Shown piece by piece: positions 1 through 29,915 of a DNA stretch of 64,000 nt. A model generated the notes under the pieces. That model worked only from the letters and a program-made list of their open reading frames with translations, ran no database searches and was not told the DNA's origin. The position numbers and the translations under genes are program-made. Position 1 is the stretch's first letter; each line of letters begins with the position of its first letter. The stretch lies in assembly GCF_022045235.1 (NCBI RefSeq), contig NW_027266275.1, positions 38,316,001-38,380,000 of the forward strand, in the 5' to 3' direction. Source of the stretch: Haliotis cracherodii (Eukaryota).

Positions 1-989
1 CTAAGAGAAGATCTTCCTAAAGAAGGCAGCAGCTCTCGTCAGCGCCTTTCTAAAGGGATGAATCTCTCTGTCATCCACAAAGCTGTGGTCGTCCTCGTCC
101 TCGTACACCCAGTAGTCACTGTCATCGTCGTCACTTGGGGCAGGGTAGTGATCAGCGTGGTTAATGGTGACGGGGGCAGGGAGCGTCTCACCGTAGACAG
201 GGCGGGCCCAGAACGGAGTGAAGACGCTCAGGGGGTCGGGACAACGGGAAGGGGACACAGCCAGGGAACGCTACACATCGAGGGGGTGGAAGGAGGGACA
301 AAGGGAGGCATGTGAGACAGAATACGGGATACGTTTGCAAAGAAAACGAATCACAGTTTATTATAGGGACTGGGCAGACTTAATGTACAATAAAACAGGG
401 GCTATAATAGAAGGAAGAAGTGACAGGGAGGGCATGTAAAACTACATACACAGTCGGACTCCTCATCCTGAGACGGCCACAAACTCACAGCCGCAGGAGT
501 GCCATAATAGCGAATTATGTCCTCCCGAGCTGAAAAAGAAAAACGAAAGCTAGGTTCAGTTAAATGTACGCCGGCGGCTGCGTTTACAAAATCACAACTT
601 ACGTCTTCTGACAGCTACAATATGTCATTAGACCTCGGCCTTTTGACAATGCGAATTCCAAGTGTATGTGGGCTTTACAGGCTGTGCTGCAAGACCACCA
701 TTAACCAATAAAATGGGCCAAACAGCTGCTTTTCACGTAATACAGGTTATCTTACATCTGTACTACAACGCTCGACACTATAATGAACGAACAGGTTTCA
801 TCTAAGCACCACATGTCAAGTTTACAATCCAAATTTTTCAATTAAGACAATTGCAAATGGCGGCCGCCATCTTCAGTCCCGATACTGCTGCCTAACAACG
901 ACCAATTTCACATCTATATTAACATCTTAATACTGTTAAGTGGAATAATTGTGACCTTAAATACCTTGAATGTGAAGCCTTGTGTTCAT
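1..989 (-). CDS. Putative 124-aa orphan protein, copy 1 (coding exons 989-965, 529-450, 270-1)
   Basis: ATG in ccaagATG context after an in-frame upstream TGA. Donor AAG|GTATTT (phase 1), acceptor tttttctttttcag|CT, donor TGT|GTATGT (phase 0), acceptor after a pyrimidine tract ...gatgtgtag|CGT. The last exon contains the 85-aa ORF of the track. No homology recognised. Confidence 0.45.
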
Positions 990-2524
990 CTTGGAAGAAG
1001 GCACACTTGGAAAGATACAGCAGTGAGCGAAACGTAGAGGTCAGCGGAGCAAATGCGATCGTTTTTCTGTTGTAAACAGAAGGGACGTGGGTAACGGCAA
1101 CGGTAACTACGTTACGGAGTTCGAGGACTCAGAACGAGGCTCATCGACAGCTTCCGGCGTGGTCAAGCCTAATGGCATTGCAGAGGCTGAAAACAGACGG
1201 GTTTATTTCGTCTGAACACCAGGCTTAAGTTGTAACTTACAACTGAAACGTTGCATACATCAGTTTAGAGTTTGAAAAAACGTGCTGGTGAAACTGGGTG
1301 TTTTTCGTGCCTCCATTATTCGGAACAGGGCGAATTTTGTTCATTTTCATATGGATCATCACTTGTAGACATTAACCTGAAACGTTGGCCACGTGGCTGG
1401 GCCGAATAGCGATACCATATAAGAACCCTCTGTTATACCAGCCTTCACAATACCTTTTACATTCGACAAACTGACACGGGCTAGTGGGCTAGTAAGAATG
1501 TGAGGGAGACTAGATATTTTTTCAGCTATGGATGCAAAACCAGTTATAAACTATGAGCCTAAATAAAACTTTTCTTTAAAAAACACACACCTTGCAACAA
1601 TTTATTTTTGGTGGCCGACATGTTCTTTTTGTTCAACAGTCTGAAGCATAATTATTTTCCAATCAATTTCTGAGACAATTTATTTGTTTCTGATAAAATC
1701 CTTCCCACCCACACACTCACAGTCAGAGAAATCCAATTGTCCGTTCCATTTTGAAAACGCTGATGTGGACGTACAGGGGACGAATTCAGACCCCTTCTAT
1801 CATTTATGTATTTTTGTAGAATGCCAGATACGAATAGTACGTCATATTTGTATTAATCTACTCTTGCATACAAGTAGGTGTCAACATAGGCGTTTTACTT
1901 GCACCTGACCACAGCCTATGTATAAAAGCATGCCCTCTGCTTTTTCTGAAGATCACGGGCCAAAGGAACAGCAGTGAAGTCGATTTCTGGAAGGCCACAA
2001 TGAAGAGACGAGTGGAATCCAATATTGTCTGGGGCGAAGGGAGATCACTCTCAATCCCTTGTCCGACTACCGGTATTAGATGGTGAAGTGCTCGTAATAT
2101 ATCCTATGTGGCGACACTTGTGTTTTAGAGAAGAAAGGCAATTCTCGATTCGAACTCCATCAATAGGAAGCCACAATCATTGTTTCATTAGAAAAGTTTA
2201 GCTAGTTAATTGGAATATTAAAATTCTTCAATAACAAAGTGTCCAAGAGAGCTATCCTCGGAAAATATCCCGTGTCACAATTGTCGCCACATAAAAATTT
2301 AGAAGTGTCAAATCTTAAGGTAGCCCCACCTATTCAGAAATCTTCTGCCGAGTACAGATCATGAAATTGGGACACAGCAGAACAGCAATATAGGGGCAAC
2401 TTTCACTGATTAACAATATCCATATGAATTTATGTCTCGTGTTCGGGAACCTTGGGATTTGGCCAGATGCCTATATTGCGATGCTGCTGTCGCCCAGATA
2501 TTATTAGCTGTAAGGATGAAACAC

Positions 2525-2571
2525 TGTAGACAAAACAGACAACTTGTGTATACATTACAGAAACATTTATT
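2525..2571 (-). terminator. Candidate polyadenylation signal plus GU-rich downstream element (units 1-7; AATAAA deleted in unit 8)
   Basis: Minus strand reads AATAAA tgtttctgtaatgtatacacaag TTGTCTGTTTTGTCT, ~740 nt past the stop codon of the next copy. Confidence 0.45.
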
Positions 2572-2759
2572 CAGATCACAGAAAGCCGAAAGTAATATGC
2601 CTCAAGAGAGATCCAAAAACGGGCCAAAATTGTATAGAACGTATAGTCTTGTGCGATTCTAATAAGCCAAGAGGTTTGCCGAAACGAAAGTGAAAGTTGG
2701 GCCAAAATGTATGTGCCTAAAAATACGCCAAAATGCACAAAGAGCAGTTATGTGGAAAG

Positions 2760-2762
<3 letters not shown>

Positions 2763-2797
<35 letters not shown>

Positions 2798-3321
2798 ACA
2801 GACATATATGTACTCGTTAATTCACTCTAACTCTCATCTCTAACATACATACCTTCTTCCTCTCACACACACATACATACATACTCATTCAGTCAGTCAC
2901 ACACACAGACACACAGACACACACACACATTAGCACACTTACACACTAATACACTAACACGAACACATGCTCATTCAATCTTTCATTTACACTCACATAC
3001 GCACACATACATACACACATGCTCATTCTCTCACTCACTCGAACACATTCAGACATTAAAAGGATAAGGAGTCTAAGAGAAGATCACACACACATTCATA
3101 CATACTCATTCAGTCAGTCCATCACACAGACACACATACACACAAACACACACACACACACTAACACACACACACTAGCACACTTACACACTTACACGAA
3201 CACATGCTCATTCAATCTTTCATTTACTCTCACATACGCACACATACATACACACATGCTCATTCACTCACTCACTCGAACACATTCAGCAGTAAAAGGA
3301 TAAGGAGTCTAAGAGAAGATC
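2763..3321. repeat. (CT)n microsatellite, CA-rich low complexity and a ~205-250-bp internal sub-repeat (2 copies per unit, 3 in unit 2)
   Basis: The block CACGAACACATGCTCATTCAATC...GGATAAGGAGTCTAAGAGAAGATC recurs within each unit. Its copy number and microsatellite lengths explain most unit-length differences. Confidence 0.9.
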
Positions 3322-4297
3322 TTCCTAAAGAAGGCAGCAGCTCTCGTCAGCGCCTTTCTAAAGGGATGAATCTCTCTGTCATCCACAAAGCTGTGGTCGT
3401 CCTCGTCCTCGTACACCCAGTAGTCACTGTCATCGTCGTCACTTGGGGCAGGGTAGTGATCAGCGTGGTTAATGGTGACGGGGGCAGGGAGCGTCTCACC
3501 GTAGACAGGGCGGGCCCAGAACGGAGTGAAGACGCTCAGGGGGTCGGGACAACGGGAAGGGGACACAGCCAGGGAACGCTACACATCGAGGGGGTGGAAG
3601 GAGGGACAAAGGGAGGTATGTGAGACAGAATACGGGATACGTTTGCAAAGAAAACGAATCACAGTTTATTATAGGGACTGGGCAGACTTAATGTACAATA
3701 AATCAGGGGCTATAATAGAAGGAAGAAGTGACAGGGAGGGCATGTAAAACTACATACACAGTCGGACTCCTCATCCTGAGACGGCCACAAACTCACAGCC
3801 GCAGGAGTGCCATAATAGCGAATTATGTCCTCCCGAGCTGAAAAAGAAAAACGAAAGCTAGGTTCAGTTAAATGTACGCCGGCGGCTGCGTTTACAAAAT
3901 CACAACTTACGTCTTCTGACAGCTACAATATGTCACTAGACCTCGGCCTTTTGACAATGCGAATTTCAAGTGTATGTGGGCTTTACAGGCTGTGCTGCAA
4001 GACCACCATAAACCAATAAAATGGGTCAAACAGATGCTTTTCACGTAATACAGGTTATCTTACATCTGTACTACATCGCTCGACACTATAATGAACGAAC
4101 AGGTTTCATCTAAGCACCACATGTCATGTTTACAATCCAAATTTTTCAATTAAGACAATTGCAAATGGCGGCCGCCATCTTCAGTCCCGATACTGCTGCC
4201 TAACAACGACCAATTTCACATCTATATTAACATCTTAATACTGTTAAGTGGAATAATTGTGACCTTAAATACCTTGAATGTGAAGCCTTGTGTTCAT
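3309..4297 (-). CDS. Putative orphan protein, copy 2 (4297-4273, 3837-3758, 3578-3309)
   Basis: Same splice signals and frame as copy 1. Candidate AATAAA on the minus strand at 2571-2566. Confidence 0.45.
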
Positions 4298-6647
4298 CTT
4301 GGAAGAAGGCACACTTGGAAAGATACAGCAGTGAGCGAAACGTAGAGGTCAGCGGAGCAAATGCGATCGTTTTTCTGTTGTAAACAGAAGGGACGTGGGT
4401 AACGGCAACGGTAACTACGTTACGGAGTTCGAGGACTCAGAACGAGGCTCATCGACAGCTTCCGGCGTGGTCAAGCCTAATGGCATTGCAGAGGCTGAAA
4501 ACAGACGGGTTTATTTCGTCTGAACACCAGGCTTAAGTTGTAACTTACAACTGAAACGTTGCATACATCAGTTTAGAGTTTGAAAAAACGTGCTGGTGAA
4601 ACTGGGTGTTTTTCGTGCCTCCATTACTCGGAACAGGGCGAATTTTGTTCATTTTCATATGGATCATCACTTGTAGACATTAACCTGAAACGTTGGCCAC
4701 GTGGCTGGGCCGAATAGCGATACCATATAAGAACCCTCTGTTATACCAGCCTTCACAATACCTTTTACATTCGACAAACTGACACGGGCTAGTGGGCTAG
4801 TAAGAATGTGAGGGAGACTAGATATTTTTTCAGCTACGGATGCAAAACCAGTTATAAACTATGAGCCTAAATAAAACTTTTCTTTAAAAAACACACACCT
4901 TGCAACAATTTATTTTTGGTGGCCGACATGTTCTTTTTGTTCAACAGTCTAAAGCATAATTATTTTCCAATCAATTTCTGAGACAATTTATTTGTTTCTG
5001 ATAAAATCCTTCCCACCCACACACTCACAGTCAGAGAAATCCAATTGTCCGTTCCATTTTGAAAACGCTGATGTGGACGTACAGGGGACGAATTCAGACC
5101 CCTTCTATCATTTATGTATTTTTGTAGAATGCCAGATACGAATATTACGTCATATTTGTATTAATCTACTCTTGCATACAAGTAGGTGTCAACATAGGCG
5201 TTTTACTTGCACCTGACCACAGCCTATGTATAAAAGCATGCCCTCTGCTTTTTCTGAAGATCACAGGCCAAAGGAACAGCAGTGAAGTCGATTTCTGGAA
5301 GGCCACAATGATTAGACGAGTGGCATCCAATATTGTCTGGGGCGAAGGGAGATCACTCTCAATCCCTTGTCCGACTACCGGTATTAGATGGTGAAGTGCT
5401 CGTAATATATTCTATGTGGCGACACTTGTGTTTTAGAGAAGAAAGGCAATTCTCGATTCGAACTCCATCAATAGGAAGCCACAATCATTGTTTCATTAGA
5501 AAAGTTTAGCTAGTTAATTGGAATATTAAAATTCTTCAATAACAAAGTGTCCAAGAGAGCTATCCTCGGAAAATATCCCGTGTCACAATTGTCGCCACAT
5601 AAAAATTTAGAAGTGTCAAATCTTAAGGTAGCCCCACCTATTCAGAAATCTTCTGCCGAGTACAGATCATGAAATTGGGACACAGCAGAACAGCAATGTA
5701 GGGGCAACTTTCACTGATTAACAATATCCATAGGAATTTATGTCTCATGTTCGGGAACCTTGGGATTTGGCCAGATGCCTATATTGCGATGCTGCTGTCG
5801 CCCAGATATTATTAGCTGTAAGGATGAAACACTGTAGACAAAACAGACAACTTGTGTATACATTACAGAAACATTTATTCAGATAACAGAAAGCCGAAAG
5901 TAATATGTCTCAAGAGAGATCCAAAAACGGGCCAAAATTGTATAGAACGTATAGTCTTGTGCGATTCTAATAAGCCAAGAGGTTTGCCGAAACGAAAGTG
6001 AAAGTTGGGCCAAAATGTATGTGCCTAAAAATACGCCAAAATGCACAAAGAGCGGTTATGTGGAAAGGTACTCTCTCTCTCTCTCACTCTCTCTCTCTCT
6101 GTGTCTTATACAGACATATATGTACTCGTTAATTCACTCTAACTCTCATCTCTAACATACATACCTTCTTCCTCTCACACACACATACATACATACTCAT
6201 TCAGTCAGTCACACACACAGACACACACACAGACACACACACACATTAGCACACTTACACACTAACACGAACACATGCTCATTCAATCTTTCATTTACAC
6301 TCACATACGCACACATACATACACACATGCTCATTCACTCACTCACTCCAACACATTCAGACATTAAAAGGATAAGGAGTCTAAGAGAAGATCACACACA
6401 CATACATACATACTCATTCAGTCAGTCAATCACACAGACACACAGACACATTAGCACACTTACACACTAACACGAACACATGCTCATTCAATCTTTCATT
6501 TACACTCACATACGCACACATACATTCACACATGCTCATTCACTCACTCACTCGAACACATTCAGACATTAAAAGGATAAGGAGTCTAAGAGAAGATCAC
6601 ACACACATACATACATACTCATTCAGTCAGTCAATCACACAGACACA

Positions 6648-6682
<35 letters not shown>

Positions 6683-6835
6683 ACACACTAACACACACAC
6701 ACTAGCACACTTACACATTTACACGAACACATGCTCATTCAATCTTTCATTTACTCTCACATACGCACACATACATACACACATGCTCATTCACTCACTC
6801 ACTCGAACACATTCAGCAGTAAAAGGATAAGGAGT

Positions 6836-7824
6836 CTAAGAGAAGATCTTCCTAAAGAAGGCAGCAGCTCTCGTCAGCGCCTTTCTAAAGGGATGAATCT
6901 CTCTGTCATCCACAAAGCTGTGGTCGTCCTCGTCCTCGTACACCCAGTAGTCACTGTCATCGTCGTCACTTGGGGCAGGGTAGTGATCAGCGTGGTTAAT
7001 GGTGACGGGGGCAGGGAGCGTCTCACCGTAGACAGGGCGGGCCCAGAACGGAGTGAAGACGCTCAGGGGCGCGGGACAACGGGAAGGGGACACAGCCAGG
7101 GAACGCTACACATCGAGGGGGTGGAAGGAGGGACAAAGGGAGGCATGTGAGACAGAATACGGGATACGTTTGCAAAGAAAACGAATCACAGTTTATTATA
7201 GGGACTGGGCAGACTTAATGTACAATAAAACAGGGGCTATAATAGAAGGAAGAAGTGACAGGGAGGGCATGTAAAACTACATACACAGTCGGACTCCTCA
7301 TCCTGAGACGGCCACAAACTCACAGCCGCAGGAGTGCCATAATAGCGAATTATGTCCTCCCGAGCTGAAAAAGAAAAACGAAAGCTAGGTTCAGTTAAAT
7401 GTACGCCGGCGGCTGCGTTTACAAAATCACAACTTACGTCTTCTGACAGCTACAATATGTCATTAGACCTCGGCCTTTTGACAATGCGAATTCCAAGTGT
7501 ATGTGGGCTTTACAGGCTGTGCTGCAAGACCACCATTAACCAATAAAATGGGCCAAACAGCTGCTTTTCACGTAATACAGGTTATCTTACATCTGTACTA
7601 CAACGCTCGACACTATAATGAACGAACAGGTTTCATCTAAGCACCACATGTCAAGTTTACAATCCAAATTTTTCAATTAAGACAATTGCAAATGGCGGCC
7701 GCCATCTTCAGTCCCGATACTGCTGCCTAACAACGACCAATTTCACATCTATATTAACATCTTAATACTGTTAAGTGGAATAATTGTGACCTTAAATACC
7801 TTGAATGTGAAGCCTTGTGTTCAT
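6836..7824 (-). CDS. Putative orphan protein, copy 3 (7824-7800, 7364-7285, 7105-6836)
   Basis: Same model, with one D->A change (CPDPL->CPAPL). Confidence 0.45.
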
Positions 7825-9686
7825 CTTGGAAGAAGGCACACTTGGAAAGATACAGCAGTGAGCGAAACGTAGAGGTCAGCGGAGCAAATGCGATCGTTTT
7901 TCTGTTGTAAACAGAAGGGACGTGGGTAACGGCAACGGTAACTACGTTACGGAGTTCGAGGACTCAGAACGAGGCTCATCGACAGCTTCCGGCGTGGTCA
8001 AGCCTAATGGCATTGCAGAGGCTGAAAACAGGCGGGTTTATTTCGTCTGAACACCAGGCTTAAGTTGTAACTTACAACTGAAACGTTGCATACATCAGTT
8101 TAGAGTTTGAAAAAACGTGCTGGTGAAACTGGGTGTTTTTCGTGCCTCCATTACTCGGAACAGGGAGAATTTTGTTCATTTTCATATGGATCATCACTTG
8201 TAGACATTAACCTGAAACGTTGGCTGGGCCGAATAGCGATGCCATATAAGAACCCTCTGTTATACCAGCCTTCACAATACCTTTTACATTCGACAAACTG
8301 ACACGGGCTAGTGGGCTAGTAAGAATGTGAGGGAGACTAGATATTTTTTCAGCTATGGATGCAAAACCAGTTATAAACTATGAGCCTAAATAAAACTTTT
8401 CTTTAAAAAACACACACCTTGCAACAATTTATTTTTGGTGGCCGACATGTTCTTTTTGTTCAACAGTCTGAAGCATAATTATTTTCCAATCAATTTCTGA
8501 GACAATTTATTTGTTTCTGATAAAATCCTTAAGCTTCCCACCCACACACTCACAGTCAGAGAAATCCAATTGTCCGTTCCATTTTGAAAACGCTGATGTG
8601 GACGTACAGGGGACGAATTCAGACCCCTTCTATCATTTATGTATTTTTGTAGAATGCCAGATACGAATATTACGTCATATTTGTATTAATCTACTCTTGC
8701 ATACAAGTAGGTGTCAACATAGGCGTTTTACTTGCACCTGACCACAGCCTATGTATAAAAGCATGCCCTCTGCTTTTTCTGAAGATCACAGGCCAAAGGA
8801 ACAGCAGTGAAGTCGATTTCTGGAAGGCCACAATGAAGAGACGAGTGGAATCCAATATTGTCTGGGGCGAAGGGAGATCACTCTCAATCCCTTGTCCGAC
8901 TACCGGTATTAGATGGTGAAGTGCTCGTAATATATTCTATGTGGCGACACTTGTGTTTTAGAGAAGAAAGGCAATTCTCGATTCGAACTCCATCAATAGG
9001 AAGCCATAATCATTGTTTCATTAGAAAAGTTTAGCTAGTTAATTGGAATATTAAAATTTTTCAATAACAAAGTGTCCAAGAGAGCTATCCTCGGAAAATA
9101 TCCCGTGTCACAATTGTCGCCACATAAAAATTTAGAAGTGTCAAATCTTAAGGTAGCCCCACCTATTCAGAAATCTTCTGCCGAGTACAGATCATGAAAT
9201 TGGGACACAGCAGAACAGCAATGTAGGGGCAACTTTCACTGATTAACAATATCCATAGGAATTTATGTCTCATGTTCGGGAACCTTGGGATTTGGCCAGA
9301 TGCCTATATTGCGATGCTGCTGTCGCCCAGATATTATTAGCTGTAAGGATGAAACACTGTAGACAAAACAGACAACTTGTGTATACATTACAGAAACATT
9401 TATTCAGATAACAGAAAGCCGAAAGTAATATGCCTCAAGAGAGATCCAAAAACGGGCCAAAATTGTATAGAACGTATAGTCTTGTGCGATTCTAATAAGC
9501 CAAGAGGTTTGCCGAAACGAAAGTGAAAGTTGGGCCAAAATGTATGTGCCTAAAAATACGCCAAAATGCACAAAGAGCGGTTATGTGGAAAGGTACTCTC
9601 TCTCTCTTTCTCTCTCTGTCTCCCTCTCTCTCTCTTATACAGACATATATGTACTCGTTAATTCACTCTAACTCTCATCTCTAACA

Positions 9687-9846
9687 NNNNNNNNNNNNNN
9701 NNNNNNNNNNNNNNNNNNNNNNNNNNNNNNNNNNNNNNNNNNNNNNNNNNNNNNNNNNNNNNNNNNNNNNNNNNNNNNNNNNNNNNNNNNNNNNNNNNNN
9801 NNNNNNNNNNNNNNNNNNNNNNNNNNNNNNNNNNNNNNNNNNNNNN
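9687..9846. other. N gap (160 N); similar 128-N gaps at 19492-19619, 22797-22924 and 26114-26241
   Basis: All four start after CTCTAACA at the same unit position, in the CA-rich tract. Confidence 0.97.
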
Positions 9847-16112: not shown

Positions 16113-16160
<48 letters not shown>

Positions 16161-16673: not shown

Positions 16674-17660
16674 CTAAGAGAAGATCTTCCTAAAGAAGGC
16701 AGCAGCTCTCGTCAGCGCCTTTCTAAAGGGATGAATCTCTCTGTCATCCACAAAGCTGTGGTCGTCCTCGTCCTCGTACACCCAGTAGTCACTGTCATCG
16801 TCGTCACTTGGGGCAGGGTAGTGATCAGCGTGGTTAATGGTGACGGGGGCAGGGAGCGTCTCACCGTAGACAGGGCGGGCCCAGAACGGAGTGAAGACGC
16901 TCAGGGGGTCGGGACAACGGGAAGGGGACACAGCCAGGGAACGCTACACATCAGGGGGGTGGAAGGAGGGACAAAGGGAGGCATGTGAGACAGAATACGG
17001 GATACGTTTGCAAAGAAAACGAATCACAGTTTATTATAGGAACTGGGCAGACTTAATGTACAATAAAACAGGGGCTATAATAGAAGGAAGAAGTGACAGG
17101 GAGGGCATGTAAAACTACATACACAGTCGGACTCCTCATCCTGAGACGGCCATAAACTCACAGCCGCAGGAGTGCCATAATAGCGAATTATGTCCTCCCG
17201 AGCTGAAAAAGAAAAACGAAAGCTAGGTTCAGTTAAATGTACGCCGGCGGCTGCGTTTACAAAATCACAACTTACGTCTTCTGACAGCTACAATATGTCA
17301 TTAGACCTCGGCCTTTTGACAATGCGAATTTCAAGTGTATGTTGGCTTTACAGGCTGTGCTGCAATACCACCATTAACCAATAAAATGGGCCAAACAGAT
17401 GCTTTTCACGTAATACAGGTTATCTTACATCTGTACTACATCGCTCGACACTATAATGAACGAACAGGTTTCATCTAAGCACCACGTCATGTTTACAATC
17501 CAAATTTTTCAATTAAGACAATTGCAAATGGCGGCCGCCATCTTCAGTCCCGATACTGCTGCCTAACAACGACCAATTTCACATCTAATTTAACATCTTA
17601 ATACTGTTAAGTGGAATAATTGTGACCTTAAATACCTTGAATGTGAAGCCTTGTGTTCAT
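16674..17660 (-). CDS. Putative orphan protein, copy 5 (17660-17636, 17202-17123, 16943-16674)
   Basis: Same model, with a synonymous TTG->TTA change in the middle exon. Confidence 0.45.
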
Positions 17661-19979
17661 CTTGGAAGAAGGCACACTTGGAAAGATACAGCAGTGAGCG
17701 AAACGTAGAGGTCAGCGGAGCAAATGCGATCGTTTTTCTGTTGTAAACAGAAGGGACGTGGGTAACGGCAACGGTAACTACGTTACGGAGTTCGAGGACT
17801 CAGAACGAGGCTCATCGACAGCTTCCGGCGTGGTCAAGCCTAATGGCATTGCAGAGGCTGAAAACAGACGGGTTTATTTCGTCTGAACACCAGGCTTAAG
17901 TTGTAACTTACAACTGAAACGTTGCATACATCAGTTTAGAGTTTGAAAAACGTGCTGGTGAAACTGGGTGTTTTTCGTGCCTCCATTACTCGGAACAGGG
18001 CGAATTTTGTTCATTTTCATATGGATCATCACTTGTAGACATTAACCTTAAACGTTGGCTGGGCCGAATAGCGATACCATATAAGAACCCTCTGTTATAC
18101 CAGTCTTCACAATACCTTTTACATTCGACAAACTGACACGGGCTAGTGGGCTAGTAAGAATGTGAGGGAGACTAGATATTTTTTCAGCTACGGATGCAAA
18201 ACCAGTTATAAACTATGAGCCTAAATAAAACTTTTCTTTAAAAAACACACACCTTGCAACAATTTATTTTTGGTGGCCGACATGTTCTTTTTGTTCAACA
18301 GTCTGAAGCATAATTATTTTCCAATCAATTTCTGAGACAATTTATTTGTTTCTGATAAAATCCTTCCCACCCACACACTCACAGTCAGAGAAATCCAATT
18401 GTCCGTTCCATTTTGAAAACGCTGATGTGGACGTACAGGGGACGAATTCAGACCCCTTCTATCATTTATGTATTTTTGTAGAATGCCAGATACGAATATT
18501 ACGTCATATTTGTATTAATCTACTCTTGCACACAAGTAGGTGTCAACATAGGCTTTTTACTTGCACCTGACCACAGCCTATGTATAAAAGCATGCCCTCT
18601 GCTTTTTCTGAAGATCACGGGCCAAAGGAACAGCAGTGAAGTCGATTTCTGGAAGGCCACAATGAAGAGACGAGTGGAATCCAATATTGTCTGGGGCGAA
18701 GGGAGATCACTCTCAATCCCTTGTCCGACTACCGGTATTAGATGGTGAAGTGCTCGTAATATATCCTATGTGGCGACACTTGTGTTTTAGAGAAGAAAGG
18801 CAATTCTCGATTCGAACTCCATCAATAGGAAGCCACAATCATTGTTTCATTAGAAAAGTTTAGCTAGTTAATTGGAATATTAAAATTCTTCAATAACAAA
18901 GTGTCCAAGAGAGCTATCCTCGGAAAATATCCCGTGTCACAATTGTCGCCACATAAAAATTTAGAAGTGTCAAATCTTAAGGTAGCCCCACCTATTCAGA
19001 AATCTTCTGCCGAGTACAGATCATGAAATTGGGACACAGCAGAACAGCAATATAGGGGCAACTTTCACTGATTAACAATATCCATATGAATTTATGTCTC
19101 ATGTTCGGGAACCTTGGGATTTGGCCAGATGCCTATATTGCGATGCTGCTGTCGCCCAGATATTATTAGCTGTAAGGATGAAACACTGTAGACAAAACAG
19201 ACAACTTGTGTATACATTACAGAAACATTTATTCAGATAACAGAAAGCCGAAAGTAATATGCCTCAAGAGAGATCCAAAAACGGGCCAAAATTGTATAGA
19301 ACGTATAGTCTTGTGCGATTCTAATAAGCCAAGAGGTTTGCCGAAACGAAAGTGAAAGTTGGGCCAAAATGTATGTGCCTAAAAATACGCCAAAATGCAC
19401 AAAGAGCGGTTATGTGGAAAGGTACTCTCTCTCTCTCTCTTATACAGACATATATGTACTCGTTAATTCACTCTAACTCTCATCTCTAACANNNNNNNNN
19501 NNNNNNNNNNNNNNNNNNNNNNNNNNNNNNNNNNNNNNNNNNNNNNNNNNNNNNNNNNNNNNNNNNNNNNNNNNNNNNNNNNNNNNNNNNNNNNNNNNNN
19601 NNNNNNNNNNNNNNNNNNNCACTAACACACTAACACGAACACATGCTCATTCAATCTTTCATTTACACTCACATACGCACACATACATACACACATGCTC
19701 ATTCTCTCACTCACTCGAACACATTCAGACATTAAAAGGATAAGGAGTCTAAGAGAAGATCACACACACATTCATACATACTCATTCAGTCAGTCCATCA
19801 CACAGACACACATACACACAAACACACACACACACACACACACACTAGCACACTTACACACTTACACGAACACATGCTCATTCAATCTTTCATTTACTCT
19901 CACATACGCACACATACATACACACATGCTCATTCACTCACTCACTCGAACACATTCAGACATTAAAAGGATAAGGAGT

Positions 19980-20969
19980 CTAAGCGAAGATCTTCCTAAA
20001 GAAGGCAGCAGCTCTCGTCAGCGCCTTTCTAAAGGGATGAATCTCTCTGTCATCCACAAAGCTGTGGTCGTCCTCGTCCTCGTACACCCAGTAGTCACTG
20101 TCATCGTCGTCACTTGGGGCAGGGTAGTGATCAGCGTGGTTAATGGTGACGGGGGCAGGGAGCGTCTCACCGTAGACAGGGCGGGCCCAGAACGGAGTGA
20201 AGACGCTCAGGGGGTCGGGACAACGGGAAGGGGACACAGCCAGGGAACGCTACACATCAGGGGGGTGGAAGGAGGGACAAAGGGAGGCATGTGAGACAGA
20301 ATACGGGATACGTTTGCAAAGAAAACGAATCACAGTTTATTATAGGAACTGGGCAGACTTAATGTACAATAAAACAGGGGCTATAATAGAAGGAAGAAGT
20401 GACAGGGAGGGCATGTAAAACTACATACACAGTCGGACTCCTCATCCTGAGACGGCCACAAACTCACAGCCGCAGGAGTGCCATAATAGCGAATTATGTC
20501 CTCCCGAGCTGAAAAAGAAAAACGAAAGCTAGGTTCAGTTAAATGTACGCCGGCGGCTGCGGTTACAAAAATCACAACTTACGTCTTCTGACAGCTACAA
20601 TATGTCACTAGACCTCGGCCTTTTGACAATGCGAATTCCAAGTGCATGTGGGCTTTACAGGCTGTGCTGCAAGACCACCATTAACCAATAAAATGGGCCA
20701 AACAGCTGCTTTTCACGTAATACAGGTTATCTTACATCTGTACTACAAAGCTCGACACTATAATGAACGAACAGATTTCATCTAAGCACCACATGTCAAG
20801 TTTACAATCCAAATTTTTCAATTAAGACAATTGCAAATGGCGGCCGCCATCTTCAGTCCCGATACTGCTGCCTAACAACGACCAATTTCACATCTAATTT
20901 AACATCTTAATACTGTTAAGTGGAATAATTGTGACCTTAAATACCTTGAATGTGAAGCCTTGTGTTCAT
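19980..20969 (-). CDS. Putative orphan protein, copy 6 (20969-20945, 20508-20429, 20249-19980)
   Basis: Same model, with terminal S->A. Confidence 0.45.
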
Positions 20970-23294
20970 CTTGGAAGAAGGCACACTTGGAAAGATACAG
21001 CAGTGAGCGAAACGTAGAGGTCAGCGGAGCAAATGCGATCGTTTTTCTGTTGTAAACAGAAGGGACGTGGGTAACGGCAACGGTAACTACGTTACGGAGT
21101 TCGAGGACTCAGAACGAGGCTCATCGACAGCTTCCGGCGTGGTCAAGCCTAATGGCATTGCAGAGGCTGAAAACAGACGGGTTTATTTCGTCTGAACACC
21201 AGGCTTAAGTTGTAACTTACAACTGAAACGTTGCATACATCAGTTTAGAGTTTGAAAAACGTGCTGGTGAAACTGGGTGTTTTTCGTGCCTCCATTACTC
21301 GGAACAGGGCGAATTTTGTTCATTTTCATATGGATCATCACTTGTAGACATTAACCTTAAACGCTGGCTGGGCCGAATAGCGATACCATATAAGAACCCT
21401 CTGTTATACCAGCCTTCACAATACCTTTTACATTCGACAAACTGACACGGGCTAGTAAGAATGTGAGGGAGACTAGATATTTTTTCAGCTACGGATGCAA
21501 AACCAGTTATAAACTATGAGCCTAAATAAAACTTTTCTTTAAAAAACACACACCTTGCAACAATTTATTTTTGGTGGCCGACATGTTCTTTTTGTTCAAC
21601 AGTCTGAAGCATAATTATTTTCCAATCAATTTCTGAGACAATTTATTTGTTTCTGATAAAATCCTTCCCACCCACACACTCACAGTCAGAGAAATCCAAT
21701 TGTCCGTTCCATTTTGAAAACGCTGATGTGGACGTACAGGGGACGAATTCAGACCCCTTCTATCATTTATGTATTTTTGTAGAATGCCAGATACGAATAT
21801 TACGTCATATTTGTATTAATCTACTCTTGCATACAAGTAGGTGTCAACATAGGCTTTTTACTTGCACCTGACCACAGCCTATGTATAAAAGCATGCCCTC
21901 TGCTTTTTCTGAAGATCACGGGCCAAAGGAACAGCAGTGAAGTCGATTTCTGGAAGGCCACAATGAAGAGACGAGTGGAATCCAATATTGTCTGGGGCGA
22001 AGGGAGATCACTCTCAATCCCTTGTCCGACTACCGGTATTAGATGGTGAAGTGCTCGTAATATATCCTATGTGGCGACACTTGTGTTTTAGAGAAGAAAG
22101 GCAATTCTCGATTCGAACTCCATCAATAGGAAGCCACAATCATTGTTTCATTAGAAACGTTTAGCTAGTTAATTGGAATATTAAAATTCTTCAATAACAA
22201 AGTGTCCAAGAGAGCTATCCTCGGAAAATATCCCGTGTCACAATTGTCACCACATAAAAATTTAGAAGTGCCAAATCTTAAGGTAGCCCCACCTATTCAG
22301 AAATCTTCTGCCGAGTACAGATCATGAAATTGGGACACAGCAGAACAGCAATATAGGGGCAACTTTCACTGATTAACAATATCCATATGAATTTATGTCT
22401 CATGTTCGGGAACCTTGGGATTTGGCCAGATGCCTATATTGCGATGCTGCTGTCGCCCAGATATTATTAGCTGTAAGGATGAAACACTGTAGACAAAACA
22501 GACAACTTGTGTATACATTACAGAAACATTTATTCAGATAACAGAAAGCCGAAAGTAATATGCCTCAAGAGAGATCCAAAAACGGGCCAAAATTGTATAG
22601 AACGTATAGTCTTGTGCGATTCTAATAAGCCAAGAGATTTGCCGAAACGAAAGTGAAAGTTGGGCCAAAATGTATGTGCCTAAAAATACGCCAAAATGCA
22701 CAAAGAGCGGTTATGTGGAAAGGTACTCTCTCTCTCTCTCTCTCTTATACAGACATATATGTACTCGTTAATTCACTCTAACTCTCATCTCTAACANNNN
22801 NNNNNNNNNNNNNNNNNNNNNNNNNNNNNNNNNNNNNNNNNNNNNNNNNNNNNNNNNNNNNNNNNNNNNNNNNNNNNNNNNNNNNNNNNNNNNNNNNNNN
22901 NNNNNNNNNNNNNNNNNNNNNNNNCACTAATACACTAACACGAACACATGCTCATTCAATCTTTCATTTACACTCACATACGCACACATACATACACACA
23001 TGCTCATTCTCTCACTCACTCGAACACATTCAGACATTAAAAGGATAAGGAGTCTAAGAGAAGATCACACACACATTCATACATACTCATTCAGTCAGTC
23101 CATCACACAGACACACATACACACAAACACACACACACACACACTAACACACACACACACTAGCACACTTACACACTTACACGAACACATGCTCATTCAA
23201 TCTTTCATTTATTCTCACATACGCACACATACATACACACATGCTCATTCACTCACTCACTCGAACACATTCAGACATTAAAAGGATAAGGAGT

Positions 23295-24284
23295 CTAAGC
23301 GAAGATCTTCCTAAAGAAGGCAGCAGCTCTCGTCAGCGCCTTTCTAAAGGGATGAATCTCTCTGTCATCCACAAAGCTGTGGTCGTCCTCGTCCTCGTAC
23401 ACCCAGTAGTCACTGTCATCGTCGTCACTTGGGGCAGGGTAGTGATCAGCGTGGTTAATGGTGACGGGGGCAGGGAGCGTCTCACCGTAGACAGGGCGGG
23501 CCCAGAACGGAGTGAAGACGCTCAGGGGGTCGGGACAACGGGAAGGGGACACAGCCAGGGAACGCTACACATCGAGGGGGTGGAGAGAGGGACAAAGGGA
23601 GGCATGTGAGACAGAATACGGGATACGTTTGCAAAGAAAACGAATCACAGTTTATTATAGGGACTGGGCAGACTTAATGTACAATAAAACAGGGGCTATA
23701 ATAGAAGGAAGAAGTGACAGGGAGGGCATGTAAAACTACATACACAGTCGGACTCCTCATCCTGAGACGGCCACAAACTCACAGCCGCAGGAGTGCCATA
23801 ATAGCGAATTATGTCCTCCCGAGCTGAAAAAGAAAAACGAAAGCTAGGTTCAGTTAAATGTACGCCGGCGGCTGCGTTTACAAAAATCACAACTTACGTC
23901 TTCTGACAGCTACAATATGTCACTAGACCTCGGCCTTTTGACAATGCGAATTCCAAGTGTATGTGGGCTTTACAGGCTGTGCTGCAAGACCACCATTAAC
24001 CAATAAAATGGGCCAAACAGCTGCTTTTCACGTAATACAGGTTATCTTACATCTGTACTACAACGCTCGACACTATAATGAACGAACAGATTTCATCTAA
24101 GCACCACATGTCAAGTTTACAATCCAAATTTTTCAATTAAGACAATTGCAAATGGCGGCTGCCATCTTCAGTCCCGATACTGCTGCCTAACAACGACCAA
24201 TTTCACATCTAATTTAACATCTTAATACTGTTAAGTGGAATAATTGTGACCTTAAATACCTTGAATGTGAAGCCTTGTGTTCAT
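23295..24284 (-). CDS. Putative orphan protein, copy 7 (24284-24260, 23823-23744, 23564-23295)
   Basis: Same model, with terminal S->A. Confidence 0.45.
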
Positions 24285-26609
24285 CTTGGAAGAAGGCACA
24301 CTTGGAAAGATACAGCAGTGAGCGAAACGTAGAGGTCAGCGGAGCAAATGCGATCGTTTTTCTGTTGTAAACAGAAGGGACGTGGGTAACGGCAACGGTA
24401 ACTACGTTACGGAGTTCGAGGACTCAGAACGAGGCTCATCGACAGCTTCCGGCGTGGTCAAGCCTAATGGCATTGCAGAGGCTGAAAACAGACGGGTTTA
24501 TTTCGTCTGAACACCAGGCTTAAGTTGTAACTTACAACTGAAACGTTGCATACATCAGTTTAGAGTTTGAAAAACGTGCTGGTGAAACTGGGTGTTTTTC
24601 GTGCCTCCATTACTCGGAACAGGGCGAATTTTGTTCATTTTCATATGGATCATCACTTTTAGACATTAACCTTAAACGCTGGCTGGGCCGAATAGCGATA
24701 CCATATAAGAACCCTCTGTTATACCAGCCTTCACAATACCTTTTACATTCGACAAACTGACACGGGCTAGTAAGAATGTGAGGGAGACTAGATATTTTTT
24801 CAGCTACGGATGCAAAACCAGTTATAAACTATGAGCCTAAATAAAACTTTTCTTTAAAAAACACACACCTTGCAACAATTTATTTTTGGTGGCCGACATG
24901 TTCTTTTTGTTCAACAGTCTGAAGCATAATTATTTTCCAATCAATTTCTGAGACAATTTATTTGTTTCTGATAAAATCCTTCCCACCCACACACTCACAG
25001 TCAGAGAAATCCAATTGTCCGTTCCATTTTGAAAACGCTGATGTGGACGTACAGGGGACGAATTCAGACCCCTTCTATCATTTATGTATTTTTGTAGAAT
25101 GCCAGATACGAATATTACGTCATATTTGTATTAATCTACTCTTGCATACAAGTAGGTGTCAACATAGGCTTTTTACTTGCACCTGACCACAGCCTATGTA
25201 TAAAAGCATGCCCTCTGCTTTTTCTGAAGATCACGGGCCAAAGGAACAGCAGTGAAGTCGATTTCTGGAAGGCCACAATGAAGAGACGAGTGGAATCCAA
25301 TATTGTCTGGGGCGAAGGGAGATCACTCTCAATCCCTTGTCCGACTACCGGTATTAGATGGTGAAGTGCTCGTAATATATCCTATGTGGCGACACTTGTG
25401 TTTTAGAGAAGAAAGGCAATTCTCGATTCGAACTCCATCAATAGGAAGCCACAATCATTGTTTCATTAGAAACGTTTAGCTAGTTAATTGGAATATTAAA
25501 ATTCTTCAATAACAAAGTGTCCAAGAGAGCTATCCTCGGAAAATATCCCGTGTCACAATTGTCACCACATAAAAATTTAGAAGTGCCAAATCTTAAGGTA
25601 GCCCCACCTATTCAGAAATCTTCTGCCGAGTACAGATCATGAAATTGGGACACAGCAGAACAGCAATATAGGGGCAACTTTCACTGATTAACAATATCCA
25701 TATGAATTTATGTCTCATGTTCGGGAACCTTGGGATTTGGCCAGATGCCTATATTGCGATGCTGCTGTCGCCCAGATATTATTAGCTGTAAGGATGAAAC
25801 ACTGTAGACAAAACAGACAACTTGTGTATACATTACAGAAACATTTATTCAGATAACAAAAAGCCGAAAGTAATATGCCTCAAGAGAGATCCAAAAACGG
25901 GCCAAAATTGTATAGAACGTATAGTCTTGTGCGATTCTAATAAGCCAAGAGATTTGCCGAAACGAAAGTGAAAGTTGGGCCAAAATGTATGTGCCTAAAA
26001 ATACGCCAAAATGCACAAAGAGCGGTTATGTGGAAAGGTACTCTCTCTCTCTCTCTCTCTCTTATACAGACATATATGTACTCGTTAATTCACTCTAACT
26101 CTCATCTCTAACANNNNNNNNNNNNNNNNNNNNNNNNNNNNNNNNNNNNNNNNNNNNNNNNNNNNNNNNNNNNNNNNNNNNNNNNNNNNNNNNNNNNNNN
26201 NNNNNNNNNNNNNNNNNNNNNNNNNNNNNNNNNNNNNNNNNCACTAACACACTAACACGAACACATGCTCATTCAATCTTTCATTTACACTCACATACGC
26301 ACACATACATACACACATGCTCATTCTCTCACTCACTCGAACACATTCAGACATTAAAAGGATAAGGAGTCTAAGAGAAGATCACACACACATTCATACA
26401 TACTCATTCAGTCAGTCCATCACACAGACACACATACACACAAACACACACACACACACTAACACACACACACACTAGCACACTTACACACTTACACGAA
26501 CACATGCTCATTCAATCTTTCATTTATTCTCACATACGCACACATACATACACACATGCTCATTCACTCACTCACTCGAACACATTCAGACATTAAAAGG
26601 ATAAGGAGT

Positions 26610-27599
26610 CTAAGCGAAGATCTTCCTAAAGAAGGCAGCAGCTCTCGTCAGCGCCTTTCTAAAGGGATGAATCTCTCTGTCATCCACAAAGCTGTGGTCG
26701 TCCTCGTCCTCGTACACCCAGTAGTCACTGTCATCGTCGTCACTTGGGGCAGGGTAGTGATCAGCGTGGTTAATGGTGACGGGGGCAGGGAGCGTCTCAC
26801 CGTAGACAGGGCGGGCCCAGAACGGAGTGAAGACGCTCAGGGGGTCGGGACAACGGGAAGGGGACACAGCCAGGGAACGCTACACATCGAGGGGGTGGAG
26901 AGAGGGACAAAGGGAGGCATGTGAGACAGAATACGGGATACGTTTGCAAAGAAAACGAATCACAGTTTATTATAGGGACTGGGCAGACTTAATGTACAAT
27001 AAAACAGGGGCTATAATAGAAGGAAGAAGTGACAGGGAGGGCATGTAAAACTACATACACAGTCGGACTCCTCATCCTGAGACGGCCACAAACTCACAGC
27101 CGCAGGAGTGCCATAATAGCGAATTATGTCCTCCCGAGCTGAAAAAGAAAAACGAAAGCTAGGTTCAGTTAAATGTACGCCGGCGGCTGCGTTTACAAAA
27201 ATCACAACTTACGTCTTCTGACAGCTACAATATGTCACTAGACCTCGGCCTTTTGACAATGCGAATTCCAAGTGTATGTGGGCTTTACAGGCTGTGCTGC
27301 AAGACCACCATTAACCAATAAAATGGGCCAAACAGCTGCTTTTCACGTAATACAGGTTATCTTACATCTGTACTACAACGCTCGACACTATAATGAACGA
27401 ACAGATTTCATCTAAGCACCACATGTCAAGTTTACAATCCAAATTTTTCAATTAAGACAATTGCAAATGGCGGCTGCCATCTTCAGTCCCGATACTGCTG
27501 CCTAACAACGACCAATTTCACATCTAATTTAACATCTTAATACTGTTAAGTGGAATAATTGTGACCTTAAATACCTTGAATGTGAAGCCTTGTGTTCAT
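26610..27599 (-). CDS. Putative orphan protein, copy 8 (27599-27575, 27138-27059, 26879-26610)
   Basis: Same model, with terminal S->A. Confidence 0.45.
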
Positions 27600-29915
27600 C
27601 TTGGAAGAAGGCACACTTGGAAAGATACAGCAGTGAGCGAAACGTAGAGGTCAGCGGAGCAAATGCGATCGTTTTTCTGTTGTAAACAGAAGGGACGTGG
27701 GTAACGGCAACGGTAACTACGTTACGGAGTTCGAGGACTCAGAACGAGGCTCATCGACAGCTTCCGGCGTGGTCAAGCCTAATGGCATTGCAGAGGCTGA
27801 AAACAGACGGGTTTATTTCGTCTGAACACCAGGCTTAAGTTGTAACTTACAACTGAAACGTTGCATACATCAGTTTAGAGTTTGAAAAACGTGCTGGTGA
27901 AACTGGGTGTTTTTCGTGCCTCCATTACTCGGAACAGGGCGAATTTTGTTCATTTTCATATGGATCATCACTTTTAGACATTAACCTTAAACGCTGGCTG
28001 GGCCGAATAGCGATACCATATAAGAACCCTCTGTTATACCAGCCTTCACAATACCTTTTACATTCGACAAACTGACACGGGCTAGTAAGAATGTGAGGGA
28101 GACTAGATATTTTTTCAGCTACGGATGCAAAACCAGTTATAAACTATGAGCCTAAATAAAACTTTTCTTTAAAAAACACACACCTTGCAACAATTTATTT
28201 TTGGTGGCCGACATGTTCTTTTTGTTCAACAGTCTGAAGCATAATTATTTTTCAATCAATTTCTGAGACAATTTATTTGTTTCTGATAAAATCCTTCCCA
28301 CCCACACACTCACAGTCAGAGAAATCCAATTGTCCGTTCCATTTTGAAAACGCTGATGTGGACGTACAGGGGACGAATTCAGACCCCTTCTATCATTTAT
28401 GTATTTTTGTAGAATGCCAGATACGAATATTACGTCATATTTGTATTAATCTACTCTTGCATACAAGTAGGTGTCAACATAGGCTTTTTACTTGCACCTG
28501 ACCACAGCCTATGTATAAAAGCATGCCCTCTGCTTTTTCTGAAGATCACGGGCCAAAGGAACAGCAGTGAAGTCGATTTCTGGAAGGCCACAATGAAGAG
28601 ACGAGTGGAATATTGTCTGGGGCGAAGGGAGATCACTCTCAATCCCTTGTCCGACTACCGGTATTAGATGGTGAAGTGCTCGTAATATATCCTATGTGGC
28701 GACACTTGTGTTTTAGAGAAGAAAGGCAATTCTCGATTCGAACTCCATCAATAGGAAGCCACAATCATTGTTTCATTAGAAACGTTTAGCTAGTTAATTG
28801 GAATATTAAAATTCTTCAATAACAAAGTGTCCAAGAGAGCTATCCTCGAAAAATATCCCGTGTCACAATTGTCACCACATAAAAATTTAGAAGTGCCAAA
28901 TCTTAAGGTAGCCCCACCTATTCAGAAATCTTCTGCCGAGTACAGATCATGAAATTGGGACAAACCAGAACAGCAATATAGGGGCAACTTTCACTGATTA
29001 ACAATATCCATAGGAATTTATGTCTCATGTTCGGAAACCTTGGGATTTGGCCAGATGCCTATATTGCGATGCTGCTGTCGCCCAGATATTATTAGCTGTA
29101 AGGATGAAACACTGTAGACAAAACAGACAAAATTGTATAGAACGTATAGTCTTGTGCGATTCTAATAAGCCAAGAGGTTTGCCGAAACGAAAGTGAAAGT
29201 TGGGCTAAAATGTATGTGCCTAAAAATACGCCAAAATGCGCAAAGAGCGGTTATGTGGAAAGGTACTCTTTAATTCACTCTAACTCTCATACCCTCTTCC
29301 TCTCACACACACATACATACATACTCATTCAGTCTCTCTCTCTCTCTCACACACACACAGACACACACACACACACACATATTTTTAACAAACACAAGTT
29401 TGTGTTTACCGTTATACTTGCCCATGTAGCCGTCGTATACATGAAAAACAGATATAAGTTGTGTGGAAGGTGTTGAAGATCTTCTTTGGTTGGCTTCAAA
29501 ATACACTGTTTACACCTGCACATAACTTAGCTACATCATAAATTTGATATATATATCTTTGTTATCTTTAAATACCCACATCGAAAATCAATCAACATGC
29601 ACTACAAGACATACTCATCACTTCCTAAAGAAATGTTTGTATTTGGATTGCTTTATTTGAAATATGAATACTTTCTACAGACGACATATGTAACTGTTAG
29701 ACTGTGTTGAAAATGAGTGAAACGGTCGATACCAGGTACTGGAGAAATACGACCTAAGTGTGTTGATTTCACATGTGTATGTTATGTAAAGAGCATACAA
29801 ACAGTGTTAAATTATAATATCCTCTGAATTCCATTGTTGTGAAAATCCAATAATATATTCTCGAAAAGAAGATCCAGGAGAAATATAGTATATATATTAC
29901 ACATAGGGAGGGGAA

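What the first reader, a model, noticed from the sequence alone, without database searches (positions are those of the whole stretch)
1..29380. The 3.3-kb 'satellite' may be a tandem array of a spliced orphan gene (124 aa)
Seen: the 85-aa minus-strand ORF starts at GTG, four codons after a pyrimidine tract ending in TAG, which fits a terminal exon. Upstream lie an 80-nt exon with a strong acceptor (tttttctttttcag) and a 25-nt ATG segment ending AAG|GTATTT. The phases match (1, then 0) and give MNTRLHIQAREDIIRYYGTPAAVSLWPSQDEESDCRSLAVSPSRCPDPLSVFTPFWARPVYGETLPAPVTINHADHYPAPSDDDDSDYWVYEDEDDHSFVDDREIHPFRKALTRAAAFFRKIFS. All indels I saw between copies, and the 3.2-kb transposon, fall outside the modelled exons. 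One exon-2 change is synonymous. Caveat: the two changes in exon 3 are non-synonymous, and divergence is too low to test selection. Inference: a recently amplified lineage-specific gene with at least 8 copies.
Basis: partly seen in the sequence, partly recalled or inferred. Interest (0 to 1): 0.85.

Follow-up and report, generated by a model that had tools for sequence, protein, structure and literature searches.

The report
Abalone orphan gene in tandem arrays
Each 3.3-kb repeat is a complete, spliced small gene known only from abalones; selection keeps it intact in about 200 copies in the black abalone genome, it is already in RefSeq as "uncharacterized protein", and its function is unknown.

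Summary
It holds 8 head-to-tail 3.3-kb units, part of a 14-unit array.

Every unit carries the three modelled minus-strand coding exons, intact and with canonical GT/AG sites. The 124-aa model is 123/124 identical to RefSeq proteins of H. cracherodii and H. rufescens. The product of copies 6-8 equals XP_071106956/63/70.

- Junction 965^529 appears in contigs of three runs. One contig adds a 5'UTR intron.
- Junction 450^270 was not seen in my single read-laying run. It rests on RefSeq models from three species and on comparative evidence.
- In 21 copies from five contigs, both introns vary in length, in all residues mod 3. Read-through always hits a stop, and exons have only in-frame indels.
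- dN/dS is 0.06-0.31, mean 0.17 at dS 0.68.

The family has about 200-240 copies on seven contigs, in two subtypes. One subtype is shared with H. asinina, so the family is old even though this array is very young.

No relative was found outside Haliotis, and no domain. The protein is acidic and mostly disordered, with a basic amphipathic C-terminal helix.

The scan probably met this family before (s1-829593).

The parts
1..29380 (-). Window part of a 14-unit tandem array of about 3.3-kb gene units. The array starts 20.5 kb before the window, at C12:38295503.
   Evidence: Self-BLAST; own-genome searches.
1..2028 (-). Gene copy 1. Exons: E0 2028-1899 (5'UTR); E1 1186-965 (ATG at 989); exon 2 529-450; exon 3 270-1 (stop at 3-1).
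3309..5336 (-). Gene copy 2. Exons: E0 5336-5207; E1 4494-4273; exon 2 3837-3758; exon 3 3578-3309. The joints 3837>4273 and 4494>5207 were seen on this copy.
6836..8861 (-). Gene copy 3, intact, with an Asp>Ala variant in exon 3. Exons: 8861-8732, 8021-7800, 7364-7285, 7105-6836.
10196..15381 (-). Gene copy 4. All exons are intact, and intron 1 is enlarged by a transposon. Exons: 15381-15252, 14548-14327, 10724-10645, 10465-10196.
11039..14204 (.). Non-autonomous DNA transposon of 3166 bp. It has CCC...GGG termini, 14-nt inverted ends and a TTAA/TAA target. It contains no domain-bearing ORF.
   Evidence: There are at least 1071 candidates genome-wide, and the 40 scored are 94-98% identical.
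16674..18690 (-). Gene copy 5, intact, with one silent change in exon 2. Exons: 18690-18561, 17857-17636, 17202-17123, 16943-16674.
19980..21991 (-). Gene copy 6, intact. Its product equals RefSeq P0003 (last residue Ala). Exons: 21991-21862, 21166-20945, 20508-20429, 20249-19980.
23295..25306 (-). Gene copy 7, intact, with the same product as copy 6. Exons: 25306-25177, 24481-24260, 23823-23744, 23564-23295.
26610..28621 (-). Gene copy 8, intact, with the same product as copy 6. It is the last unit, truncated at unit position about 2766 (window 29269). Exons: about 28621-28492, 27796-27575, 27138-27059, 26879-26610.
2863..3321 (.). Spacer and probable 3'UTR. It holds CA/TG microsatellites and an internal 220-bp duplication that repeats the last 12 nt of the CDS plus the stop. 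The only AATAAA on the minus strand is at unit position 2571.
9687..9846 (.). Assembly gap in the spacer. The other three gaps (19492-19619, 22797-22924, 26114-26241) sit at the same unit position. All are outside the exons.

Best explanation
Each 3.3-kb unit is a self-contained minus-strand transcription unit of a Haliotis-only gene family.

Shown:
- The unit has at least four exons: 5'UTR exon E0, exon E1 with the ATG, an 80-nt exon 2, and a 270-nt terminal coding exon.
- It has canonical GT/AG introns of about 712, 435 and 179 nt.
- It encodes a 124-aa product.
- Purifying selection acts on all three coding exons.

The array itself is young. Copies differ by 0-1.4%, and it grew by duplication or unequal crossing-over, partly in a two-unit register. 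The family is old: there are about 200-240 copies in some 25 or more arrays on seven chromosome-scale contigs, and two subtypes.

Inferred:
- The protein is 14 kDa with pI 4.7. It has no signal peptide or transmembrane segment and is mostly disordered.
- It has invariant aromatic residues in a Pro-rich and strongly acidic middle (net charge -10 over residues 81-100), and a basic amphipathic C-terminal helix (residues 107-123).
- It most likely stays inside the cell and acts through short linear motifs plus the helix, binding a partner or a membrane surface.
- The arrays are probably kept for gene dosage, that is, bulk expression at some stage or condition still to be identified.
For: - Sequence: the modelled exons and splice signals are present, and all 8 window copies are intact without exon indels.
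- Transcript evidence: joint 3837>4273 (unit 529^965, CT..AC on the + strand, which is GT..AG on the minus strand) occurs in contigs of X1, X2 and X3, from three organisms and three studies. Joint 4494>5207 occurs in X1, with canonical sites.
- RefSeq: Haliotis proteins of 124 aa (H. cracherodii, H. rufescens) and 120-122 aa (H. asinina) contain both exon joins. The model is 123/124 identical to P0003, P0014 and P0016.
- Species: contig lengths 82358895 and 61937186 identify the genome as H. cracherodii.
- Open frames: all 150 scored genomic copies of exon 3 are open, at 88-89 aa and 74-100% identity.
- Paralogues: in 21 copies the GT/AG sites of intron 2 and the intron-1 acceptor are conserved in all, and the ATG and intron-1 donor in the 19 whose exon 1 could be aligned. 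Exon 2 has a 3-nt indel and exon 3 a 1-codon indel.
- Selection: dN/dS is 0.06-0.31, with an A x B mean of 0.17 at dS 0.68. Introns differ by about 45%, with many gaps.
- Intron 2: its length is 166-340 nt, in all residues mod 3, and read-through stops after 8-32 codons.
- Copy number: a conserved 25-mer gives 202 hits against 0 in the control.
- Array history: the unit distance matrix shows a two-unit periodicity.
- Protein: no Pfam family; only Haliotis hits among 1.84 billion representatives; AF2 mean pLDDT 56 with a single helix at 107-123; charge and hydrophobic moment.
Against: - Junction 450^270 was not among the joints in the four runs laid. Contigs of X2 and X3 run through intron 2. 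These could be DNA, pre-mRNA, paralogues or genuine intron retention, which would give a 50-aa product.
- All runs were Logan contigs whose RNA status is only a guess. Tissue, strand and expression level are therefore unknown.
- The 5' leader seen in X1 has three upstream ATGs.
- There is no protein-level evidence.
- The statement about function rests on sequence features only.
Confidence: 0.85

Rival explanations
1. The units are transcribed, but the 124-aa protein is not the functional output. The mRNA would mostly retain intron 2, giving a 50-aa peptide, or would act as RNA. The RefSeq models would then be computational.
For: No 450^270 joint was seen, and there are intron-2-containing contigs at appreciable depth. 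The leader contains uATGs. RefSeq also holds an odd 655-aa model that chains nine copies of exon 3.
Against: dN/dS is about 0.17 on exon 3, in the frame that only this splice provides. The frame is open at 88-89 aa in 150 of 150 copies, down to 74% identity. GTATGT...TAG is conserved at intron 2 in all 21 copies examined. There is no ATG within exon 3.
Confidence: 0.07
2. It is non-coding satellite DNA, and the open frame and splice-like signals are chance features or remnants of an amplified pseudogene.
For: The units are in tandem head-to-tail arrangement with microsatellite-rich spacers. The ORF lacks its own ATG.
Against: The evidence listed under the best explanation applies here as well: spliced contigs, RefSeq models in three species, purifying selection, and only in-frame exon indels against freely varying introns.
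Confidence: 0.02
3. The unit is cargo of, or was spread by, a mobile element. This would explain arrays on seven chromosomes. The gene would then be a captured or TE-encoded ORF.
For: The arrays are dispersed, with unit lengths of 3.0-5.3 kb. A 21-nt inverted repeat pair lies upstream of E0. The X1 contig continues from E0 into an interspersed repeat with 1101 genomic copies.
Against: None of the unit's ORFs of 50 aa or more scanned has a transposase, RT or integrase domain. The unit has no terminal repeats. The loci of the interspersed repeat share nothing with the unit except CA repeats. The only clear transposon is a secondary insertion in one copy.
Confidence: 0.05

Closest known systems
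RefSeq 'uncharacterized protein' genes of Haliotis (e.g. LOC125376035, LOC125376031 and LOC125372355 of H. rufescens; XP_071106956.1 of H. cracherodii; XP_067685017.1 of H. asinina)
   Same: This is the same gene family. In H. cracherodii the genes are the same ones: the product of copies 6-8 is identical to XP_071106956/63/70. The three-coding-exon structure is identical.
   Different: Nothing differs. The array organisation, copy number, subtypes and selection were worked out here.
Protein-coding macrosatellites of mammals (D4Z4/DUX4 with 3.3-kb units, TSPY, CT47, RS447/USP17)
   Same: These also have kilobase-sized head-to-tail units that each contain a whole gene. Within-array identity is very high, and copy number is shaped by unequal exchange (from general knowledge).
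   Different: There is no sequence relation. Here the gene is spliced and orphan, is under clear purifying selection, and sits in many arrays on seven chromosomes. Nothing is known about its expression or about epigenetic silencing.
Ampliconic germline gene families (Drosophila Stellate/Su(Ste), mouse Slx/Sly)
   Same: They are young, lineage-restricted small genes amplified to tens or hundreds of tandem copies (from general knowledge).
   Different: Those families are tied to sex chromosomes and genetic conflict and often evolve fast. Here dN/dS is about 0.17, and no link to sex, germline or conflict has been shown.
Other orphan gene arrays noted by this scan in the same genome (s1-829593, s1-823174, s1-836500)
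   Same: s1-829593 describes a 3.5-kb macrosatellite with a spliced abalone-only gene in several hundred copies. It is probably this family, since the arrays on C78 have a 3.5-kb period. The other two are different orphan arrays.
   Different: I did not compare sequences with those notes. This window holds the 3.3-kb A-type array on C12.

Membership tests
Haliotis RefSeq uncharacterized-protein family (LOC125376035-like) | Full-length protein identity and the same exon joins | tested here: met
   The model is 123/124 identical to P0003, P0014 and P0016, and the ...SDC|RSL... join is present. Exon-wise translations of copies 6-8 equal P0003.
Haliotis RefSeq uncharacterized-protein family (LOC125376035-like) | Same genome record | tested here: met
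   Contig lengths 82358895 and 61937186 of G000 equal those given for the H. cracherodii proteins.
Protein-coding gene (against non-coding satellite) | Purifying selection on the reading frame | tested here: met
   dN/dS is 0.06-0.31. All 150 scored copies are open. Exon indels are in frame.
Protein-coding gene (against non-coding satellite) | Spliced transcripts across both coding introns | tested here: inconclusive
   Intron 1 and a 5'UTR intron are seen spliced in contigs. The intron-2 joint was not seen in the one call allowed. It is supported only by RefSeq models and comparative evidence.
Transposable element | Transposase, RT or integrase ORF, or terminal repeats bounding the unit | tested here: not met
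   No Pfam TE domain in any of the unit's ORFs scanned. No terminal repeats.
SH3 domain | Significant sequence match and a five-stranded beta-barrel fold | tested here: not met
   The best PDB profile hit is spectrin SH3 at E = 0.2, as an ungapped 45-aa stretch. No Pfam SH3 hit at E up to 10. The AF2 model has no strands.
Secreted or membrane protein | N-terminal signal peptide or a hydrophobic segment | tested here: not met
   The maximum 19-residue Kyte-Doolittle mean is 0.40, and the N-terminus is polar. No dedicated signal-peptide predictor was available.

The most novel reading that the evidence does not exclude
The family is a dosage-driven orphan system. Hundreds of near-identical copies of a disordered acidic protein would be kept by selection to supply a burst of product at one stage or condition, for example gametogenesis or early cleavage, or stress protection in an intertidal animal. 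Array size would then be a selectable, fast-evolving trait in abalones. This would be a mollusc counterpart of the ampliconic or macrosatellite gene families of flies and mammals, but under purifying selection.
Probability: 0.2. Interest if true: 0.6.

Novelty: new member of a known kind. Interest (0 to 1): 0.4.

Why it matters
It shows that a repeat which looks like a 3.3-kb satellite is in fact a conserved, spliced gene. A genus-restricted gene of unknown function takes up roughly 0.8 Mb of the black abalone genome, about 200 units of 3-5 kb.

Orphan genes amplified to hundreds of copies yet under purifying selection are uncommon. They are a tractable entry into how new genes gain dosage-dependent roles.

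There are practical consequences too. Such arrays are prone to assembly collapse (this one has four gaps), to chained gene models (the 655-aa RefSeq model), and to multi-mapping loss in RNA-seq. The family is therefore likely to be under-reported in abalone expression studies.

The gene models themselves are already public, so the gain is in characterisation, not discovery.

Tried and rejected
- Rfam and tRNA scans of the array found nothing.
- A whole-unit DNA search of the own genome was not scored because there were too many candidates. Shorter queries worked.
- Pfam on exon 3, on full-length RefSeq proteins and on the other unit ORFs gave nothing significant. The best hits were LTI65/78 at E = 0.14 and STAS_2 at 0.044, both far below the cut-offs.
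- ESM Atlas: best score 0.77, which is in the noise range.
- phmmer against 1.84 billion representatives found only Haliotis, plus one repetitive 574-aa metagenome protein at E = 1.3e-4. That protein matches a short acidic stretch repeated nine times, and I take it as spurious.
- AF2 with the 24-sequence family alignment gave pLDDT 56 and pTM 0.17. The model was too poor for a fold search, so none was run.
- The PDB profile search gave spectrin SH3 at E = 0.2. I rejected this as membership.
- Literature: no paper was found for the LOC or XP identifiers, for peptide strings, for 'abalone macrosatellite', or for abalone satellite DNA.
- The 50 loose letters of the X1 contig beyond E0 belong to an interspersed repeat with 1101 copies that is unrelated to the unit. 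Whether they represent an upstream exon in that species or a contig chimera stays open.
- Joined model: I sent no joined (spliced) sequence to any search tool. Searches used exon references or RefSeq protein ids. In one local script I did translate the three exons together, only to count identities against the fetched RefSeq proteins.
- The N runs were neither filled nor looked up.
Full report
**Observation**

A self-comparison of the window shows eight head-to-tail units of about 3.3 kb, starting at 1, 3309, 6836, 10196, 16674, 19980, 23295 and 26610. They are 97-99% identical. The last unit is truncated near 29269, just before a CA run that ends at 29379.

- an ATG at 989, followed by AAG|GTATTT at 965/964;
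- an 80-nt exon at 529-450, behind tttttctttttcag and followed by GTATGT;
- a terminal exon from 270 to the TAG at 3-1, behind a pyrimidine tract ending in TAG.

All eight copies keep these exons without any indel and with identical splice signals. One exon-2 change, in copy 5, is silent. Copy 3 has Asp>Ala, and copies 6-8 share Ser>Ala at the last residue.

**The N runs**

All four gaps lie at the same place in the unit, positions about 2846-2957. This is the CA/TG-rich spacer, 350-490 nt downstream of the stop codon of the next copy. They touch no exon and no frame. Their flanks are collinear with ungapped units, but continuity cannot be shown. I did not fill them.

**The insert**

The stretch 11039-14204 has CCC...GGG termini, 14-nt inverted ends and a TTAA/TAA target. 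No ORF in it bears a domain. The genome holds at least 1071 candidates; the 40 scored are 94-98% identical. It is a young non-autonomous DNA transposon, and it sits in intron 1 of copy 4. The exons of that copy are untouched.

**What it is**

A protein search with the exon-3 translation found only abalone RefSeq proteins. These are 'uncharacterized protein' entries of Haliotis rufescens and H. cracherodii (124 aa, with 130-145-aa isoforms) and of H. asinina (120-122 aa).

The model is 123/124 identical to P0003, P0014 and P0016. Taken exon by exon, the product of copies 6-8 equals P0003, which carries three H. cracherodii accession numbers.

The contig lengths of the window's genome (82,358,895 and 61,937,186) equal those listed for the H. 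cracherodii proteins. The window is therefore black abalone, and these very genes are already annotated.

**Transcript evidence**

Fifteen runs guessed to be RNA, from four organisms and six studies, hold about a third of the 31-mers of window 1-1100. That is roughly the exon share.

I laid four of them on copy 2.
- A joint 3837>4273 appears in X1, X2 and X3.
- One X1 contig continues through a second joint, 4494>5207, whose sites are canonical (ttttcag| and CAA|GTAAAA).

So the ATG exon is 222 nt long (unit 1186-965), with an in-frame TGA upstream of the ATG. At least one 5'UTR exon lies at unit 2028-1899. It is present with its signals in all eight copies.

Contigs of X2 and X3 run through intron 2. 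These runs are contigs of uncertain library type, from species with hundreds of paralogues. This is therefore a missing observation, not a contradiction.

**Comparative test**

That is true within the array, but not within the genome.

Exon 3 has at least 242 candidates genome-wide. All 150 that were scored are open, at 88-89 aa and 74-100% identity. A conserved 25-mer occurs 202 times against 0 for the control, on contigs C1, C2, C12, C34, C45, C56 and C78, nearly always at 3.0-5.3-kb spacing.

I fetched 20 copies from five contigs and aligned them with copy 2.
- The GTATGT donor and TAG acceptor of intron 2 and the CAG acceptor of intron 1 are conserved in all 21 copies.
- The ATG and the GT donor of intron 1 are conserved in every copy whose exon 1 could be aligned, which is 19 of 21. 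One of the other two, L023, has the same transposon family in that region.
- Exons differ only by in-frame indels: one codon in exon 2 and one in exon 3.
- Intron 1 ranges from 274 to 631 nt and intron 2 from 166 to 340 nt, in all residues mod 3.
- Read-through from exon 2 meets a stop after 8-32 codons in every copy.
- Pooled over the three exons, dN/dS is 0.06-0.31. The mean between subtypes is 0.17 at dS 0.68. Introns are about 45% different, with many gaps.

Together these results establish a spliced protein-coding gene under purifying selection, and they support the intron-2 splice independently of reads.

**History**

There are two subtypes.
- Type A is 124 aa, starts MNTR..., and lies on C12, C78 and C1.
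- Type B is 122 aa, starts MFTR..., and lies on C34, C56 and C45; the two C2 copies carry the B-type variant of the 25-mer.

The exon-3 translations of black-abalone type B copies are 88-93% identical to H. asinina P0020, but only 76-78% identical to type A. The family and its split are therefore old.

This array is young. It has 14 copies in the assembly, and they differ by 0-21 substitutions per 1500 nt. Alternate units are the most alike, with 0-5 differences at distance two against 10-14 at distance one. This points to recent duplication in a two-unit register. Assembly errors in such repeats could distort that picture.

**The protein**

- It matches no Pfam family.
- It has nothing in the Atlas above noise.
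- It has no relative outside Haliotis among 1.84 billion representatives.
- AlphaFold gives mean pLDDT 56, with one helix at residues 107-123.
- It is 14 kDa, pI 4.7, with 12 prolines and 16 aromatic residues. Residues 81-100 carry net charge -10.
- The last 18 residues form a basic amphipathic helix with hydrophobic moment 0.6.
- No hydrophobic segment or signal-like N-terminus is present.
- A profile hit to spectrin SH3 (E = 0.2) is not significant, and neither Pfam nor the model backs it.

My best reading is an intracellular, mostly disordered protein that acts through conserved aromatic-acidic motifs and the C-terminal helix, with the arrays kept for dosage. That part is inference.

**Rivals**

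- A non-coding satellite is excluded by the results above.
- An RNA-only or intron-retaining output is unlikely given the selection on exon 3, but it is not excluded by reads.
- A transposon origin finds no support: there are no TE domains and no terminal repeats.

**Novelty**

The gene models are public, and no paper on them was found. Two notes just upstream of the window (s1-829725, s1-829847) concern the same array.

The finding is correct and moderately interesting. It is a gene-bearing macrosatellite family of unknown function, not a new kind of element.

**Limits**

- Only one read-laying run was allowed.
One local script translated the exons together to count identities with RefSeq proteins.

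Noticed in passing
window 11039-14204; also G000:C34:58146276-58146873 (inside L023): A young non-autonomous DNA transposon with CCC...GGG ends and a TTAA/TAA target. The genome holds at least 1071 candidates, 94-98% identical among the 40 scored. It has inserted at least twice within members of this gene family, in the region of intron 1 (in this array and in a C34 array).
   Followed up: partly
window 1-29380 plus C12:38295503-38316000: Alternate units are nearly identical (0-5 differences per 1500 nt), while direct neighbours differ by 10-14. This indicates a two-unit higher-order repeat in the array. It could in part be an assembly effect.
   Followed up: partly
window 2863-3085 and 3084-3321 (and the same place in other units): The spacer contains an internal 220-bp duplication, 88% identical, that repeats the last 12 nt of the coding sequence, the stop codon and about 30 nt after it.
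   Followed up: no
window 965-1186 and 1899-2028 (minus strand): The 5' leader seen in one contig carries three upstream ATGs, giving short uORFs of 10 and 23 codons and one that runs off exon E0.
   Followed up: partly
RefSeq protein P0029 (XP_071118469.1, H. cracherodii, contig C34): A 655-aa gene model chains nine copies of exon 3 from successive units. It is either an annotation artefact of the array or a sign of splicing between units.
   Followed up: no
Read laying loose end behind window 5339 (run X1): The contig that joins exon 2, E1 and E0 continues into 50 letters of an interspersed repeat with 1101 genomic copies. That repeat is absent from the window. It may be an upstream exon in another species or a contig chimera.
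   Followed up: partly
window 34099-36396 (+), 37493-38047 (-), 38765-39769 (+): Just beyond the array lie an LTR-retroelement pol fragment (RNase H and integrase domains) and two Tc1/mariner-type transposase ORFs. I only observed these.
   Followed up: partly
window 52842-56337: A 34-nt satellite with about 103 copies at 87% matches. Smaller 21-22-nt and 194-nt repeat arrays lie at 46446-47919.
   Followed up: no
window 5410-5430 / 5584-5604 (unit positions about 2102-2296): A 21-nt inverted repeat pair, 153 nt apart, lies just upstream of exon E0 in the presumed promoter region. It may be a MITE remnant or a regulatory element.
   Followed up: no
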